64,000 nt of DNA from Obrimoposthia wandeli (taxonomy: Eukaryota). The notes beneath the pieces were generated by a model. It was not told where the DNA came from. It ran no database searches and saw only the letters and a program-made list of their open reading frames with translations. Both the position numbers and the translations under genes were made by a program. The stretch spans positions 248,001 to 312,000 of the forward strand of contig CDROCS010002834.1 of the NCBI GenBank assembly GCA_977020255.1, in the 5' to 3' direction. Of the stretch, positions 48,773 to 62,656 are shown piece after piece; the first letter of the stretch is position 1, and each line of letters begins with the position of its first letter.

Positions 48773-49044
48773 GAGTCTATCTTCCTGAAGTAAGTATTTA
48801 ATCAATCCCTGTATTATCGTTATTTTTCTAACTGTAGGGCGGGAATTGTTAGAGTTGCACAACAACAGAATATTAAATCAACCATACTCAATGCAAGTCA
48901 CATTCAACACTAACATAACGAAAGATATAAACGATTGCATTTTTTTCGCATAAATAACCACAGAAAGATTGACAACCTAGTAACAAATCCTATTCAATGA
49001 GAGGAGTTTTTGTTCATCCTGCTGGTATTAATACCACTAGGTAA

Positions 49045-49230
49045 AACGGAAGAGGAGCGTTACCCAGGTATTTAGATTGCAGGGCCCCACCCTAAAGCAA
49101 CCTAAAGAGGGGGAGTAACGCCGAGATATAACTGATGGGGATCAGCGATATCGGCTATGAAGGTTGAATCCTTCTGGCTGTCACCTTTTTATGCATAAGT
49201 ACCATATAAAAAGGTGGGGAGCTTCTGGTT
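49045..49230 (+). promoter_or_regulatory. Lysine riboswitch (L-box) upstream of lysC
   Basis: ggaAGAGGAGCG..AGGTA..GGGGGAGTAACGCCGAG..TCGG..GGTTGAATCC..CTGTCACC..GGTGGGGAGCTTCTG pattern; P1 cggaag/cttctg; lies in the lysC leader. Confidence 0.88.
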
Positions 49231-49340
49231 GTAGCGCTATTCGTACGTCTCGCCTTTCTGCTCTCCTGACAATTGGATGTCGGGAATATCCTCCCGCGTA
49301 AATTCGTTTTTATCATTTTACTGAGATTGGGAGTCTTACC

Positions 49341-50803: not shown

Positions 50804-53800
50804 TTATAAATTAGGCCCTAACCACTTCTCAGCTTCAAGAAGATCCCAACCTTTACGATCAGCATAACTATCACGCTGATCTGCTTGAATCTGAGCAACG
50901 GCAAAGTAGCGAGACTCTGGATGAGAAAAATACCACCCCGATACAGCCGCACCAGGCCACATGGCATAGCTTTCCGTTAAGACCATGCCTGTATTTGCCT
51001 CTGCATCTAATAATGTCCAAATAGCCCCTTTTTCTGTATGCTCGGGGCAGGCAGGGTATCCTGGGGCTGGACGTATTCCTTGATACTTTTCACGGATCAA
51101 ATCTTCATTCGCGAGCGACTCTTCAGGCGCATAGCCCCAAATGTCTTTTCGTACCGTTTCATGCATACATTCAGCAAAAGCCTCAGCTAAACGATCTGCA
51201 ATCGCCTGTACCATAATCGCGTTATAATCATCACCTTTGGCTTTAAACTGGTCTGCAATGTCATATTCACCAATACCGCCCGTTACAGCAAAAGCACCTA
51301 TCCAATCAGCTTTGTTACTTTCTTTAGGCGCAATATAATCTGATAAACAATAGTTAGGCCCTTTCGGTTTCTTCGTCTGTTGACGCAAACCACACAGTAC
51401 TGTCAGCACTTCAGAGCGAGTCTCATCGGTGTACACTTCAATATCGTCACCGATATTATTGGCAGGGAATAAACCACACACACCGTTTGCTTTGATCATG
51501 CCTGTACACTCAATCTCATCTAACAATACATTTGCATCATCAAATAAACGCTGAGCTTCTTCACCCACAACCTCATGGCGAAAAATAGTTGGATACTTAC
51601 CACTTAATGACCAAGTCATGAAAAATGGCGTCCAATCAATATATTTACGAATCTTAGATATTGGAAAATCAGTAAAGACGTGGATACCCGGCTTCACTGG
51701 AGCTGGCGGTGTATAGCTCTCCCAATCTATAGCGACTTTATTTTCTCGCGCTTTATCTAACGTAACTGGTGGTGTTCGTGGTTTTTTACGCGCATGTTGC
51801 TCACGTACCGTAATATATTCTTTATCTAAGCGCTCAATAAATGCTGGTCGTAATACATCAGATAACAATGCAGAGCAAACCCCTACAGCACGAGACGCAT
51901 TGGAGACATAAACAACAGGTCCGTGATAGTTTTCTTCAATCTTAACCGCAGTGTGCGCTTTCGAGGTCGTGGCACCACCAATCAGCAATGGCAACTCAAA
52001 ACCTTGTCGCTCCATCTCTTTCGCCACATGCACCATTTCATCTAATGATGGGGTAATAAGACCACTTAAGCCTATGATATCGACATTTTTTTCTTTTGCT
52101 ACTTTCAGTATTTTTTCGCAAGAAACCATAACCCCAAGGTCAATAATTTCATAGTTATTACACTGCAAGACAACGCCCACAATATTCTTACCAATATCGT
52201 GAACATCACCTTTTACTGTCGCTAGCAGAATTTTACCATTGGTATAACCCGCTTGCTTTTCAGCATTAATATAAGGTTCAAGGTGAGCAACAGCTTGCTT
52301 CATAACACGGGCTGATTTAACTACCTGAGGTAAGAACATTTTACCTTCACCAAATAAATCACCGACAATATTCATCCCTGCCATCAACGGGCCTTCAATT
52401 ACTTCGAGAGGCTTAGAGGCATTGGTGCGAGCTTCTTCTGTATCTTCAACAATGAACTCAGTTATCCCTTTAACCAAGGCATGTGATAAGCGCTTTTCTA
52501 CAGGCCACCCTCGCCATTCTTGTAGCGTACGATCTTCTTCTACTTTACCGCTACCACGGTATTTGTCCGCAATATCCAATAAGCGTTCGGTGCTATCATC
52601 ACGGCGGTTTAAGACGACATCTTCAACGGCATTACGGAGTTCATCGGTTAAATCATCATAAATCGCAAGCTGCCCTGCATTCACAATTCCCATATCCATA
52701 CCATTTTTAAAACAGTAATAGAGGAATACGGCATGGATCGCTTCTCGAATTGGATCATTACCTCGGAACGAGAAAGACACATTAGAAACACCACCAGAAA
52801 CCATCGCATAAGGCAGTGTACGCTTGATGTCTCCTACCGCCTCAATGAAATCGACGGCATAGTTGTTATGCTCTTCAATGCCTGTTGCTACGGCAAAAAT
52901 ATTCGGATCGAAAATAATATCTTCAGGCGGGAAACCGACTTCATCCACTAAAATATGATAAGCATTAGTACAGATCTCGATTTTACGTTCACGCGTATCT
53001 GCTTGCCCTTCTTCATCAAAAGCCATCACAATAACCGCAGCACCATAACGGCGGATCAATTTCGCTTGTGCGATAAAGTTTTCAACGCCCTCTTTCATCG
53101 AAATAGAGTTGACGATCGGTTTACCTTGTATGCACTTTAAACCCGCCTCAAGTATTTCCCATTTAGATGAATCGACCATAATGGGGACTTTCGAAATCTC
53201 TGGTTCCGTTGCACATAAATTTAAGAAACGTACCATCGCCGCTTCTGCATCCAACATGCCCTCATCCATATTGATATCGATAATTTGAGCGCCAGCTTCT
53301 ACTTGTTGGCGCGCAACTTCTAATGCCTCATCATATAATTCATCTTTGATGAGTCGCTTGAAACGAGCAGAACCTGTTACATTGGTTCGTTCACCCACAT
53401 TCACAAATAAGGTATCAGCAGTGATTGTGAGAGGCTCTAGCCCTGATAAACGACAAGAAATAGGAATATCAGGTAACTGACGAGGTGCAACATTTCGGGT
53501 AACTTGTTCCATTAAGCGAATATGTTCTGGCGTTGTACCACAACAGCCCCCAACTAAATTGAGGAATCCACTTTTCGCCCATTCTTCAATATGTTCAGCC
53601 ATATCTTCAGGGCTAAGGTCATATTCACCAAATGCATTCGGCAATCCAGCATTTGGGTGAGCAGAAACAGCGCTTTCAGAAATCCGCGATAATTCATCAA
53701 CGTATTGACGTAATTCATCAGGACCTAACGCACAGTTCAAACCAAATGAGATCGGTTTAACATGGCGAAGAGAGTTATAAAATGCTTCGGTTGTTTGACC

Positions 53801-54475
53801 TGAAAGTGTTCGACCCGAGGCATCGGTGATCGTGCCGGAGATCATGATAGGTAAAACAATACCATCTTCATCAAAAACCGTTTCAACAGCGAAAGTACAC
53901 GCTTTCGCATTCAGCGTATCAAAAATAGTTTCAACTAAGATTAAGTCGACGCCACCCGCGATAAGAGCTCGTGTTGATTCAGAATAGGCTTCAACTAATT
54001 GATCAAATGTAACGTTACGAAAGCTAGGGTCGTTAACGTCAGGAGAAATCGAACACGTTCGGTTGGTCGGGCCAAGCACGCCAGCAACAAAGCGAGGTTT
54101 AGACGGTGTTTTAAGCGTCCATTCATCTGCTGCTTGGCGAGCCAGCTTAGCCGCTTCAAAGTTAATCTCAGCGCTTAGACTTTCCATGTCATAGTCAGCC
54201 ATGGCTATGGTGGTAGAATTAAATGTGTTGGTCTCAAGAATATCAGCGCCCGCTTCTAGGTACTCGCCATGAATATCCTTAATTAGCTGTGGTTGTGTTA
54301 AGACGAGAAGGTCATTATTCCCTTTAAGATCTGAATGCCAATCAGAAAAACGTTCACCTCGATAATCATTTTCATCCAATTTATAGCCTTGGATCATAGT
54401 GCCCATGCCACCATCAATAATCAGGATATTTTCAGCTAACCGCTTCTGTAGTACTTCCTTACTCTTCACCACCAC
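50804..54475 (-). CDS. metH: Cobalamin-dependent methionine synthase
   Basis: [30 protein letters not shown]12 motif [22 protein letters not shown]. Confidence 0.98.
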
Positions 54476-54667: not shown

Positions 54668-55948
54668 ATGTCGGTCTACAGTACCTTATGCTTTCTCGCA
54701 GCAGCAGCGATGGCTATTGCCTTTATAAACAGCAAGATAGGTAAGATGCAAACAACAATTGCGATTACTGCAGGTGCATTAATGTTGTCTTTAGGCATCA
54801 TTATTGCGGGTCAGAATGGCTGGTTTCATTTAGAAGATATTGCAGCTGAACAGCTTGCTGATATCGATTTTGAAAGTTTTTTACTTAAAGGCATTTTAGG
54901 CTTTTTACTTTTTGCGGGCGGGCTAGGAATTAAACTTCCTAATCTAGAAGATCAAAAGTGGGAAATTACAGTTTTAGCCTTGGGTGCCACACTTTTTTCA
55001 ACCTTTTTCATCGGCGGTGCGCTCTGGGGCGTATGTCAATTATTAGGCTTTCAATTCGATTTAATCTACTGCTTAATATTCGGATCTTTAATATCACCAA
55101 CGGATCCAATCGCTGTACTTGCTATTGTTAAAAAGCTAGATGCGCCTCGTCGTATTTCCACACAAATTGAAGGGGAGTCATTATTTAATGATGGCTTTGG
55201 TCTCGTAATTTTTGTTACGTTATTCACTATCGCCTTTGGTAATGAAGCTCCAACAGTCCTAGGGGTAGGACAATTATTCCTACAAGAAGCAATTGGTGGT
55301 ATTGCTTACGGCTTTATTCTTGGGCTGCTTTTCCATTATTTGATTAGCTCTACGAATGATCACTCCATGGAGCTATTACTGACATTAGGTATTCCAACAG
55401 CTGGTTATGTATTTGCTGATGTCATTCATGTATCAGGACCATTAGCAATGGTTGTATCTGGTATTATGATTGGTAACTGGACACGCTATATTGGTTTTTC
55501 AAAAGAAAGTGAAGAACACTTAGATCACTTTTGGGAATTAGTTGATGAATTCTTAAATGGCGTTCTATTTTTACTTATCGGTATGACCATGCTTCAATTC
55601 AGCTTCCATCAAGAAGATTGGGTACTGATGGTAATCGCAATCCCTCTCGTATTACTAAGCCGTTATCTAAGTGTAAAATTGTCTTATCTTGGCTTTCAGA
55701 AGTACCGCGATTACAACCCACACTCGGTGAAAATATTAACTTGGGGTGGCTTACGTGGTGGTTTAGCTTTAGCAATGGCAATGGCAATTCCCGCTGGTGT
55801 TATTGTGATACCAGAAAAAAACATTGATGTGAGAGAGATCATTCTTGTCATGACTTATGCTGTTGTCGTTTTCTCCATCCTAATTCAGGGATCAACGATT
55901 ACCGCATTAATCCATAAAGCCAAAATGTGGGAAGCTCAAAATAAATAA
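54668..55948 (+). CDS. CPA1-family Na+/H+ antiporter (NhaP-like)
   Basis: LGFLLFAGG, ISPTDPIAV, IEGESLFNDG, WGGLRGGLALAM, ILIQG; ~12 TM segments. Confidence 0.92.
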   Translation: MSVYSTLCFLAAAAMAIAFINSKIGKMQTTIAITAGALMLSLGIIIAGQNGWFHLEDIAAEQLADIDFESFLLKGILGFLLFAGGLGIKLPNLEDQKWEITVLALGATLFSTFFIGGALWGVCQLLGFQFDLIYCLIFGSLISPTDPIAVLAIVKKLDAPRRISTQIEGESLFNDGFGLVIFVTLFTIAFGNEAPTVLGVGQLFLQEAIGGIAYGFILGLLFHYLISSTNDHSMELLLTLGIPTAGYVFADVIHVSGPLAMVVSGIMIGNWTRYIGFSKESEEHLDHFWELVDEFLNGVLFLLIGMTMLQFSFHQEDWVLMVIAIPLVLLSRYLSVKLSYLGFQKYRDYNPHSVKILTWGGLRGGLALAMAMAIPAGVIVIPEKNIDVREIILVMTYAVVVFSILIQGSTITALIHKAKMWEAQNK

Positions 55949-56206: not shown

Positions 56207-56396
56207 GGTGTTCACTGTGAATCGACACCTTTAAAACCTTGGGGATCAAGCTACGATTTACCACGATACTAGTGTACCTCTCGCCTTAAAACACGCAGTC
56301 CACTCACCAAGATAAGTAACTCCTGTATGTTCAGCACTCATTGATGGCCTGCCAGTAAGAAAAGCGGCAACGTTATGTGCTGTCGACCAAAATACC
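56207..56396 (+). pseudogene. Eroded IS1595-family (ISPna2-like) transposase N-terminal remnant
   Basis: Hand translation across stops and frameshifts gives VHCESTPLKPWGSSYDLPRY*CTSRLKTRSPLT / HQDK*LLYV / SALIDGLPVRKAATLCAVDQNT, resembling the zinc-ribbon + HTH of IS1595 transposases. No catalytic domain or intact ends seen. Confidence 0.65.
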
Positions 56397-56452
56397 ATCA
56401 AGCTCTACATGATGGTTGGGGCTGCTGTACGCATGCCGCAACAACTTATTCA

Positions 56453-56551
56453 GACATAACCTTTCTATTTGCCTCAAAACCAGTACGACCCACAATGTAG
56501 CAGGCCGCTAAGATCTCCAATAAAAAGTCGAACCCACTGAGTTACCACTCC
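56453..56551 (-). pseudogene. Degenerate tRNA-Asp copy A (3'-truncated, carries the same two inserts as copy B)
   Basis: Aligns to copy B (ctttctattt.cctcaaaaccag..caggccgctaag.tctccaataaaaag..accactcc) and keeps the flanking tag g(t/c)agtgtctattca. Anticodon region is mutated. Confidence 0.75.
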
Positions 56552-56645
56552 GTAGTGTCTATTCAGTACTAATTCCCATTTTATACAGACGTAAAAAAGC
56601 CCTAATCTTTCCTGCTCTACCTTAAAGAGGGGGCTTCTTCAATAA

Positions 56646-56753
56646 TGGCGACGTTAACGGGACTTTCTATTTACCTCAAAACCAGCGCGACCCACAGCGT
56701 GACAGGCCGCTAAGCTCTCCAATAAAAAGCCTAACCAACTGAATATCCACTCC
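56646..56753 (-). pseudogene. Degenerate tRNA-Asp copy B (108 nt; GTC anticodon and CCA retained, inserts in D arm and T loop)
   Basis: Sense GGAGTGGatattcagttggttag[21 nt]cggcctGTCacgctgtgggtcgcg[21 nt]agtcccgttaacgtcgCCA versus the intact tRNA-Asp. Confidence 0.85.
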
Positions 56754-56793
56754 GCAGTGTCTATTCAATGCTAATTTCCATTTCCTATAGACG

Positions 56794-56824
56794 AAAAAAA
56801 GCCCTAATCTTTCGATTAGGGCTT
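56794..56824 (-). terminator. Intrinsic terminator of the rrn/tRNA-Asp transcript
   Basis: Minus strand aagccctaatc-GAAA-gattagggc followed by T7. Confidence 0.85.
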
Positions 56825-56833
56825 CTTCAATAA

Positions 56834-56910
56834 TGGCGGAGTGGACGGGACTCGAACCCGCGACCCCCGGCGTGACAGGCCGGTATTCTAACCAACTGAA
56901 CTACCACTCC
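56834..56910 (-). tRNA. tRNA-Asp(GTC)
   Basis: GGAGTGGTAGTTCAGTTGGTTAGAATACCGGCCT-GTC-ACGCCGGGGGTCGCGGGTTCGAGTCCCGTCCACTCCGCCA, 77 nt, intact cloverleaf. Confidence 0.97.
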
Positions 56911-57010
56911 GCAGTGTCTATTCAGCATAATGCTATTACTTACAATAAAACGGTTCATCGTTTTATTTTTGTCTTCATATTTTCTAAAAGAAAAAATGAA
57001 AACGAATTGG

Positions 57011-57130
57011 GCGCCTGGCGATGCCCTACTCTCACATGGGGAGACCCCACACTACCATCGGCGCAACTGCGTTTCACTTCTGAGTTCGGCATGGGATCAG
57101 GTGGAGCCACAGCGCTATGGTCGCCAGACA
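57011..57130 (-). rRNA. rrf: 5S rRNA
   Basis: Sense TGTCTGGCGACCATAGCG..CCCATGCCGAACTCAGAAGTGAAACG..GTAGGGCATCGCCAGGC. Confidence 0.96.
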
Positions 57131-60369: not shown

Positions 60370-60383
60370 ATTGTTAAAGAACA
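60370..60383 (-). promoter_or_regulatory. ITS antitermination boxA
   Basis: Sense TGTTCTTTAACAAT, identical to the leader boxA. Confidence 0.8.
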
Positions 60384-62642: not shown

Positions 62643-62656
62643 ATTGTTAAAGAACA
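62643..62656 (-). promoter_or_regulatory. rrn leader boxA
   Basis: Sense TGTTCTTTAACAAT, followed downstream by a boxC-like GTGTGGGCACTC. Confidence 0.8.

What the first reader, a model, noticed from the sequence alone, without database searches (positions are those of the whole stretch)
56453..56924. Tandem tRNA-Asp array whose downstream copies are disrupted by discrete ~15-bp inserts at RNA loops and stems
Seen in the sequence: the unit [spacer + terminator + tRNA-Asp + gcagtgtctattca tag] occurs three times. The 5' ends lie at 56910 (intact), 56753 (B) and 56551 (A), giving spacings of 157 and 202 bp. The 45-bp difference is fully explained by three block replacements in unit B: terminator loop (gatta -> ctgctctaccttaaagagg, +14, 56612-56630), T loop (cgaacc -> ttctatttacctcaaaaccag, +15, 56665-56685) and D arm (gtatt -> ctaagctctccaataaaaagc, +16, 56710-56730). 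Copy A shares both tRNA inserts, so it was most likely duplicated after insertion. Copy B keeps the GTC anticodon and CCA. Inference: this is not ordinary point-mutation decay; near-equal-sized blocks were placed at structured positions, which suggests a repeated insertion or patch-recombination process acting on tRNA/terminator hairpins, or a tRNA-derived ncRNA with extra arms.
Basis: partly seen in the sequence, partly recalled or inferred. Interest (0 to 1): 0.7.

Follow-up and report, generated by a model that had tools for sequence, protein, structure and literature searches.

The report
Conserved tRNA-Asp-derived repeats after rRNA operon
The two broken tRNA-Asp copies behind this rRNA operon belong to an old, unannotated repeat family found in about a third of sampled Vibrionaceae species; it is transcribed, and its inserted 21-base block is its most conserved part, which suggests a function that is still unknown.

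Summary

The D-arm and T-loop blocks are inherited. A sequence profile finds the same two-block unit in 48 of 151 sampled Vibrionaceae species, up to 13 copies per genome. Two Alteromonadales genera also carry the D block. The orthologous locus in Aliivibrio fischeri ES114 has such units too.

The units are not tRNAs. Copy number changes through unequal recombination and deletions at short repeats.

Two results argue against plain decay. The 21-nt D block, which the real tRNA lacks, is the most conserved part of the unit: 95.5% identical between genera, against 54-55% for the leader and spacer. RNA libraries from three studies contain the units.

No conserved RNA fold, GGA enrichment, promoter, mobile-element trait or boxA pairing was found.

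The closest known kind is the E. coli tRNA-linked repeats, of which rrA, rrB and rrF are read-through small RNAs.

My best reading is a tRNA-Asp-derived linked-repeat family whose role depends on the D-block sequence. Function and partner are unknown.

The parts
57013..57128 (-). 5S rRNA, the last rRNA gene of the operon (context)
   Evidence: Rfam RF00001, 99.4 bits
56911..56924 (-). 14-nt leader in front of the real tRNA-Asp; it is repeated in front of units B and A
   Evidence: Alignment A1. The same leader stands before the real tRNA-Asp in Aliivibrio
56834..56910 (-). The functional tRNA-Asp (GTC)
   Evidence: ARAGORN; Rfam tRNA, 70.4 bits
56794..56822 (-). Intrinsic terminator of the real tRNA-Asp: a 9-bp G+C-rich stem, a GAAA loop and a T run
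   Evidence: Fold of -21.6 kcal/mol, z -6.4
56754..56767 (-). Leader copy of unit B
   Evidence: Alignment A1
56646..56753 (-). Body of unit B: a tRNA-Asp-derived sequence of 108 nt that is not a tRNA
   Evidence: Model R1 scores it 104 bits, against 40.5 bits for the real tRNA. ARAGORN and Rfam do not call it
56709..56730 (-). D block of unit B. It replaces tRNA positions 23-27 and is the most conserved part of the family
56663..56685 (-). T block of unit B, which replaces most of the T stem-loop
56593..56634 (-). Altered terminator of unit B. Its 5' arm is replaced by a 20-nt block (56611-56630) and it folds more weakly than the intact terminator
   Evidence: Fold of -17.0 kcal/mol, z -2.3. 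The block is restricted to the P. profundum clade
56552..56565 (-). Leader copy of unit A
   Evidence: Alignment A1
56461..56551 (-). Unit A, the terminal unit. It is cut off right after its T block. Its D block is at 56507-56528 and its T block at 56461-56483
   Evidence: R1 scores it 63.4 bits over model positions 1-91
54668..55948 (+). Convergent Na+/H+ exchanger gene. It marks the orthologous locus in relatives
   Evidence: Pfam PF00999, E 1.7e-53. The same gene follows the array in P. profundum and Aliivibrio

Best explanation
Units B and A belong to an old family of repeats linked to tRNA-Asp genes in Vibrionaceae. One unit consists of a leader, a tRNA-Asp-derived body and, usually, a terminator. 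In the body, a 21-nt block replaces the 3' strand of the D stem, and a block of about 23 nt replaces most of the T stem-loop.

Shown here: the blocks were inherited and were not inserted in this genome. The units are not tRNAs. Arrays grow and shrink by unequal recombination between units and by deletions at short repeats, which leaves a truncated last unit. The tRNA-like flanks match whichever real tRNA-Asp allele lies next to them. The units occur in RNA libraries.

Inferred: RNA polymerase reads through the tRNA-Asp terminator at a low rate, so unit RNA is made in step with rRNA and tRNA-Asp transcription. Purifying selection keeps the D-block sequence. The unit therefore has a sequence-specific role. 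The most likely role is as an RNA that offers the D block to a protein or RNA partner, in the manner of the E. coli tRNA-linked-repeat small RNAs RrA, RrB and RrF. A role as an extra terminator module is an additional or alternative possibility. The partner is unknown.
For: The family is old and widespread. The D-block signature occurs in Photobacterium, Aliivibrio and Vibrio, and in Thalassotalea and Psychrosphaera. A sequence-only profile finds units in 48 of 151 sampled Vibrionaceae species, up to 13 per genome. In A. fischeri ES114, 4 of 5 rrn-distal and 1 of 2 stand-alone tRNA-Asp genes carry 1-4 units. The orthologous locus next to the Na+/H+ exchanger gene carries units in P. profundum, ES114 and G077, with copy numbers from 2 to 4.

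The units are not tRNAs. The acceptor stem pairs in only 71% of cells.

Selection. D-block identity is 95.5% between genera, 95.5% within genomes and 93% between rrn-type and chromosome-II-type units. The corresponding figures are 84/82/82% for the anticodon arm, 63/81/78% for the 5' half of the T block, 55/80/40% for the leader and 54/69/47% for the spacer. These units were found through the real tRNA-Asp and the D-loop sequence next to it, not through the D block. Full units carry 0.55 D-block changes on average, against 1.57 in truncated units (p=0.03).

Transcription. RNA contigs span the blocks in three studies. In X20 the depth is about 126 in a run of 5.5 million letters. In X18 a 598-nt contig runs from unit sequence into a downstream flank.

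Recombination. Other rrn ends of this genome hold 0 to 3 units, with deletion joints at short repeats.

Precedent. PMC8144298 describes the E. coli tRNA-linked repeats and the read-through small RNAs RrA, RrB and RrF that lie between dual rrn terminators.
Against: No RNA structure is supported. The RNAalifold consensus energy is -2.6 kcal/mol. For both candidate D-block helices, shuffled partners pair as well as or better than the real ones. Unit B folds no better than shuffled sequence (z -0.5).

No partner was found. Complementarity to the rrn transcript is no better than for shuffled D blocks, and pairing with boxA is not significant. GGA motifs are not enriched.

Many copies are truncated or deleted, some rrn ends have none, and two thirds of the sampled species gave no hit. 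The element is therefore dispensable.

The RNA evidence comes from assembled contigs of relatives and metatranscriptomes. It does not come from reads of this strain, and it shows neither transcript ends nor stability.

The comparison of full with truncated units rests on few copies that are not independent.
Confidence: 0.6

Rival explanations
1. The units are dead pseudogenes. Tandem duplicates of the module made of tRNA-Asp and its terminator lost function long ago. They persist only through unequal crossing-over and gene conversion among the many rrn ends. They are transcribed only because the terminator leaks.
For: Copy number varies from 0 to 4 per locus, and truncated terminal units and short-repeat deletions are common. 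There is no covariation, no stable fold, no partner and no motif enrichment. Two thirds of the sampled species gave no hit.
Against: Concerted evolution does not slow divergence between species. Yet the D block is 95.5% identical between genera while the leader and spacer are at 54-55%. The real tRNA has no D block, so it cannot repair one. The D block is also kept at chromosome-II loci that have a different tRNA-Asp allele, leader and terminator. Bacterial pseudogenes are normally deleted quickly (general knowledge).
Confidence: 0.27
2. One reading: an active process in this genome inserts blocks of about 15 bp, or patch-recombines them, into tRNA and terminator hairpins.
For: Three blocks of similar size sit at structured positions. 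A 5'-truncated tRNA-Trp copy at another rrn end has a 10-nt insertion in its anticodon loop. The terminator block is specific to one clade, so at least one such event came later than the others.
Against: The D and T blocks are shared across genera and predate this species. The blocks occur nowhere else in the window or the assembly. No units were found in phage or plasmid collections. All 30 extra tRNA-Asp copies examined at the 26 tRNA-Asp loci of four genomes carry the D block or a cut remnant of it, and none is a fresh intact duplicate.
Confidence: 0.04
3. The unit is a structured tRNA-like RNA with extra arms. The D and T blocks pair with each other, or the D block forms its own hairpin, to build a defined fold that is the functional entity.
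For: The minimum-energy fold pairs the D block with the 3' half of the T block. This helix pairs in 91-95% of cells and the local hairpin in 86-91%, against 35-57% for most slid registers (up to 72% for the local-hairpin structure). The two changes in the Aliivibrio D-block variant both turn G-U pairs into Watson-Crick pairs.
Against: There is no covariation beyond what base composition gives: 496-499 of 500 shuffles do at least as well. Several lineages carry uncompensated mismatches. Thalassotalea has the D block but no T block. The z-score of the fold is -0.5.
Confidence: 0.08
4. The array is an assembly artefact: collapsed or chimeric repeats at an rrn end.
For: rrn ends are classic breakpoints for assemblies. 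No single record spans the whole array.
Against: Contigs with no differences cover both units and their junctions in X1. The same architecture is present in complete genomes of relatives.
Confidence: 0.01

Closest known systems
tRNA-linked repeats (TLRs) of Escherichia coli K-12 (Egan and Landy 1978; Rudd 1999; as summarised in PMC8144298)
   Same: Both are repeat units lying directly downstream of a tRNA or rRNA gene in the same orientation, one to five per locus. Both end with a copy of the 3' end of the upstream gene. Most have no known function.
   Different: E. coli TLRs share only 18-19 bp with the upstream gene. Here the whole tRNA-Asp is recognisable, including its leader, 5' acceptor strand, D loop and anticodon arm, and it is interrupted by two family-specific blocks. 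There is no such unit after E. coli aspU or aspV. Unit B itself keeps only 13 of the 19 3'-terminal bases.
RrA, RrB and RrF small RNAs between the dual terminators of E. coli rrnA, rrnB and rrnD (PMC8144298)
   Same: Both lie between a first, leaky terminator and a second terminator at the end of an rRNA operon. Both are made by read-through, so their level follows rRNA transcription. Both are conserved across genera.
   Different: RrA, RrB and RrF have a conserved predicted structure and five GGA motifs that bind CsrA. Here no fold is conserved and GGA is not enriched. The E. coli RNAs follow 5S, whereas these units follow tRNA-Asp. No binding data exist for these units.
3'ETS-leuZ, a sponge RNA cut from the glyW-cysT-leuZ tRNA precursor (Lalaouna 2015, as cited in PMC8144298)
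   Same: It is a regulatory RNA made from the trailing part of a tRNA transcript. It acts through a short conserved sequence and not through a tRNA function.
   Different: 3'ETS-leuZ lies before the terminator and is not tRNA-derived. No partner RNA was found for the D block.
Ordinary bacterial tRNA pseudogenes, and the tRNA remnants left by integrating elements
   Same: These are also degenerate tRNA copies lying next to a functional tRNA gene.
   Different: Integration remnants are 3' fragments that flank an island. These units keep the leader and 5' half, lie in tandem, and carry a conserved block that is not tRNA sequence.

Membership tests
Functional tRNA (Rfam RF00005 / ARAGORN) | The cloverleaf is recognised by a covariance model or a tRNA finder | tested here: not met
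   Only 56834-56910 is called. Units B and A are not found even at E<=10.
Functional tRNA (Rfam RF00005 / ARAGORN) | Paired acceptor stem and intact D and T arms | tested here: not met
   In unit B the acceptor 3' strand has changed. The acceptor stem pairs in 71% of cells across the family. The 3' strand of the D stem and the T loop are replaced.
tRNA-linked repeats (TLR) | Lies immediately downstream of a tRNA or rRNA gene, in the same orientation and the same transcription unit | tested here: met
tRNA-linked repeats (TLR) | The last 18-19 bp are identical to the 3' end of the upstream tRNA | tested here: inconclusive
   Many family members keep 18-19 of 19 bases (for example units in L026, L031 and L035). 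Unit B keeps 13 of 19, and unit A lacks its 3' end.
tRNA-linked repeats (TLR) | One to several tandem copies per locus, at several loci | tested here: met
   There are 0 to 4 units per locus and up to 13 matches per genome.
tRNA-linked repeats (TLR) | Sequence homology to the E. coli TLRs | not tested
   The E. coli TLR sequences were not fetched. Only the regions after aspU and aspV were scanned, and they hold no unit.
RrA/B/F-type rrn read-through small RNA | [quoted passage not shown] | tested here: met
   The real terminator and the unit terminator are both present. RNA contigs cover the units in three studies. This was shown in relatives and metatranscriptomes, not in this strain.
RrA/B/F-type rrn read-through small RNA | Conserved secondary structure | tested here: not met
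RrA/B/F-type rrn read-through small RNA | Several GGA motifs that bind CsrA | tested here: not met
   There are 1.89 GGA per unit against 1.91 in shuffles. The GGA in the D block is missing from several variants. Binding itself cannot be tested here.
Small mobile insert (MITE-like) | Copies elsewhere in the genome, terminal inverted repeats and a target-site duplication | tested here: not met
   The blocks occur only inside tRNA-Asp-derived units in the window and the assembly. They are absent from phages and plasmids.

The most novel reading that the evidence does not exclude
The units encode a widespread small RNA of Vibrionaceae, so far undescribed, that was exapted from tRNA-Asp. It would be made in proportion to rRNA and tRNA-Asp transcription through terminator read-through. 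Its nearly invariant 21-nt D block would be the docking site for a specific protein or RNA, which would link growth rate to another process. A. fischeri ES114 offers a ready genetic system for testing this.
Probability: 0.35. Interest if true: 0.7.

Novelty: new variant of a known kind. Interest (0 to 1): 0.55.

Why it matters
Functions for tRNA-linked repeats have been an open question since 1978, and only one subgroup has partial answers so far. This work defines a second family that is much more widespread. It retains a whole recognisable tRNA, lies behind rRNA operons and tRNA-Asp genes in many marine bacteria, is not annotated in the A. fischeri ES114 genome (that annotation lists only 7 tRNA-Asp genes and 5 pseudogenes; PMC11294920), and has no Rfam family. 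Its best-conserved part is sequence that is not from the tRNA, which gives a precise and testable handle. If the family is functional, it would be a clear bacterial case of a tRNA gene copy turned into a different RNA. If it is not, it is a useful example of how long dead repeats can survive next to highly recombining rRNA operons. The practical value is that gene finders can miscall these units: ARAGORN labels one a 92-nt tRNA-Cys.

Tried and rejected
1. Mobile mini-insert. The blocks occur only inside the units and in no phage or plasmid.

2. Conserved RNA fold. I tested the local D hairpin, the D-T long-range helix, an inner helix and T-stem remnants. Pairing is high, but only because a U tract faces purine tracts, and covariation does not exceed the shuffles.

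3. D block as an anti-boxA element that would strip the rrn antitermination complex. The real boxA lies at 62644-62656 and 60371-60383. Duplex energies are not significant: leader p=0.13, ITS p=0.01 uncorrected and tested post hoc. Complementarity to the whole operon is no better than for shuffled D blocks.

4. CsrB-like CsrA sponge. GGA is not enriched.

5. Sigma-70 promoter in or around the D block. None was found on either strand.

6. Intrinsic terminator formed by the D-block U tract. No stem precedes it. The scan instead flags a weak hairpin made of the anticodon arm and variable region, followed by the U-rich start of the T block. I did not pursue this further.

7. Small ORFs. Only non-conserved ORFs of 40-41 aa overlap unit A.

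8. Archaeal-type tRNA introns. I considered these because of the size and position of the blocks. I did not pursue them, because bacteria lack the splicing endonuclease (general knowledge) and the acceptor stem is broken.

9. Integration-site remnant. Rejected, because the units keep the leader and the 5' half.

10. Exact-motif survey of the family. It found 12 of 301 species, a large undercount compared with the profile search.

11. Literature. No paper prints the D block, and three topic searches found no description of these units.

Units that contained N in P. sagamiensis loci were left out and were not filled.

Full report
WHAT IS THERE

The window carries an rRNA operon on the minus strand: 16S, tRNA-Glu, tRNA-Lys, tRNA-Val, 23S, 5S and tRNA-Asp. 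Only one tRNA-Asp is called, at 56834-56910. Downstream of its strong terminator lie two further tRNA-Asp-like units. Unit B has a 108-nt body at 56646-56753, its own leader and a terminator. Unit A (56461-56551) breaks off right after its T block.

Compared with the real gene, unit B has three replaced blocks:
- a 21-22-nt block in place of the 3' strand of the D stem (56709-56730);
- a 23-nt block in place of most of the T stem-loop (56663-56685);
- a 20-nt block in place of the 5' arm of the terminator (56611-56630).

Unit A has the first two blocks, with 2 and 1 mismatches.

Short-read contigs of run X1, probably the source sample, match 56250-56606, 56630-56726 and 56706-56814 without a single difference. 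The sequence is therefore not an assembly artefact, although no single record spans the whole array.

NOT A LOCAL EVENT

Other rrn ends of the same bacterium in this assembly hold 0 to 3 such units. Some have deletions whose joints lie at short repeats: in L004 the start of the D block is fused to a terminator tail, and in L005 only the 3' part of a unit remains.

A clearly different bacterium in the same assembly (contigs C506 and C3649) has units with blocks at the same two places.

A scan of public genomes for the D-block signature found true matches in five Photobacterium genomes, two Aliivibrio, two Vibrio, and in Thalassotalea and Psychrosphaera. An exact-motif survey of the family gave only 12 of 301 species. 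That was a large undercount. A sequence-only profile built from 34 units scores the real tRNA-Asp at 40.5 bits and full units at 64-110 bits. It finds units in 48 of 151 sampled Vibrionaceae species, up to 13 per genome. Draft assemblies break at rrn ends, so this is a lower bound.

I fetched tRNA-Asp loci through the real gene and not through the motif. In A. fischeri ES114, 4 of 5 rrn-distal and 1 of 2 stand-alone tRNA-Asp genes carry 1-4 units. Genome G077 is similar. A complete P. profundum-like genome has units at 2 of 7 loci. Each of the 30 extra tRNA-Asp copies at these loci, together with this genome's own rrn ends, carries the D block or a cut remnant of it. No fresh intact duplicate was seen.

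The same Na+/H+ exchanger gene (PF00999) follows the array in P. profundum, in ES114 and in G077. Copy numbers at this locus run from 2 to 4. The D and T blocks are therefore inherited and predate the split of these genera. Only the terminator block is confined to the P. profundum clade.

NOT A tRNA, AND NO SUPPORTED FOLD

Neither ARAGORN nor Rfam recognises the units. The acceptor stem is broken in about half of them. Unit B folds no better than shuffled sequence (z -0.5). RNAalifold gives -2.6 kcal/mol.

Two candidate helices pair in 86-95% of cells: a local D-block hairpin, and a long-range helix between the D block and the 3' half of the T block. With 70 distinct sequences that include real D-block variants, shuffling the partners among sequences does as well or better. 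The pairing therefore reflects a U tract facing purine tracts.

EVIDENCE AGAINST PLAIN DECAY

In the set fetched through the real gene, the D block is the most conserved part of the unit:

- D block: 95.5% between Photobacterium and Aliivibrio, 95.5% within genomes, 93% between rrn-type and chromosome-II-type units.
- Anticodon arm: 84%, 82%, 82%.
- 5' half of the T block: 63%, 81%, 78%.
- Leader: 55%, 80%, 40%.
- Spacer: 54%, 69%, 47%.

The chromosome-II units have a different tRNA-Asp allele, leader and terminator. The real gene has no D block, so gene conversion from it cannot explain this conservation, and concerted evolution does not slow divergence between species.

Truncated units that still hold a whole D block carry more changes in it than full units do: 1.57 against 0.55, p=0.03. 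The sample is small and the copies are not independent.

The units are also transcribed. RNA libraries of three studies hold contigs that span the blocks. One is a transcriptome of 5.5 million letters (X20). Its contigs carry the Aliivibrio-type T block at depth about 126, against about 2600 for tRNA-Asp; that is far more than contaminating DNA could give. A 598-nt metatranscriptome contig (X18) runs from unit sequence into a downstream flank. These are contigs from relatives, so they show presence but not transcript ends, strand or stability.

WHAT IT IS NOT

- The blocks occur nowhere else in the window or the assembly, and not in phages or plasmids.
- There is no sigma-70-like promoter.
- GGA motifs are not enriched.
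- The D block is no more complementary to the rrn transcript than shuffled versions, and its resemblance to the complement of boxA is not significant.
- E. coli K-12 has no such unit after aspU or aspV.

CLOSEST KNOWN

E. coli has 22 tRNA-linked repeats. These are units downstream of tRNA or rRNA genes that end with 18-19 bp of the upstream gene, and they long had no known function. Three of them (rrA, rrB, rrF) lie between the dual terminators of rrn operons. [quoted passage not shown]

The present family shares the position, the tandem habit, the copied 3' end (18-19 of 19 bases in many members, 13 of 19 in unit B) and the read-through transcription. It differs in keeping a whole recognisable tRNA interrupted by two family-specific blocks, in lacking a supported fold, and in lacking GGA enrichment.

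I found no description of it. No paper prints the D block, three topic searches were negative, the ES114 annotation lists only 7 tRNA-Asp genes and 5 pseudogenes (PMC11294920), and no Rfam family matches.

From memory, and not verified here: repeated tRNA genes with pseudogenes were described in a Photobacterium phosphoreum tRNA operon in the late 1980s (Giroux and Cedergren), but for tRNA-Pro and tRNA-His.

VERDICT

The proposed insertion process is not supported. The array is a local sample of an old, widespread, transcribed repeat family derived from tRNA-Asp, and the sequence of its D block appears to be under selection.

I put about 0.9 on this descriptive account and about 0.5 on a real sequence-specific function, most likely at the RNA level. 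The partner and the mechanism remain unknown.

LIMITS

- The assembly is 1.35 Gb and holds several bacteria. I worked only on bacterial contigs.
- Read laying was given 901 letters.
- Units containing N were left out.

Noticed in passing
L007:1760-1900 (G000 contig C1209, an rrn end with tRNA-Asp and tRNA-Trp): After the real tRNA-Trp and its terminator lies a 5'-truncated tRNA-Trp copy. It has a 10-nt insertion in the anticodon loop, an exact copy of the tRNA 3' end, and its own terminator. This is a classic tRNA-linked-repeat layout in the same genome.
   Followed up: partly
L010:1291-1382 (G000 contig C3649): ARAGORN calls a 92-nt 'tRNA-Cys (aca)'. It is in fact a tRNA-Asp-derived unit with a D-block-like insert and an intact T arm. 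It is both an intermediate form and an example of a miscall by a gene finder.
   Followed up: partly
L012, L013 and L017 (G000 contig C253, about 3087700-3088700): Another bacterium in the assembly has seven intact tandem tRNA-Asp genes, mostly at 143-bp spacing, with no D-block unit. The array is followed by a long tandem run of the 9-base unit AAAAATCCA.
   Followed up: partly
L090:1295-1402 and L087:1677-1989 (Aliivibrio chromosome II, stand-alone tRNA-Asp loci): The units here have a nearly intact acceptor stem of the second tRNA-Asp allele. Three of the four have the anticodon loop CTGACAC, which reads GAC instead of GTC. They carry the same D and T blocks as the rrn-linked units.
   Followed up: no
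L033:3329-3459; L114:400-529 and 777-907 (also L044 and L048): A subfamily in the P. phosphoreum group has a further insertion of about 26 nt in the region between the variable loop and the T stem.
   Followed up: no
window 56687-56710 and 56485-56508 (minus strand): The terminator scan flags a 9-pair hairpin in each unit. It is built from the 3' end of the D block, the anticodon arm and the variable region, and is followed by the U-rich start of the T block. Its tail is weak, and its function was not tested.
   Followed up: no
window 62644-62656 and 60371-60383 (minus strand): These are the boxA antiterminator copies of this operon (TGTTCTTTAACAA), one in the leader and one in the 16S-23S spacer.
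   Followed up: partly
window 49042-49232 (plus strand): Lysine riboswitch, Rfam RF00168, 91.2 bits.
   Followed up: no
window 50804-54475 (minus strand): A large ORF of 1223 aa lies just beyond the exchanger gene. I did not examine it.
   Followed up: no
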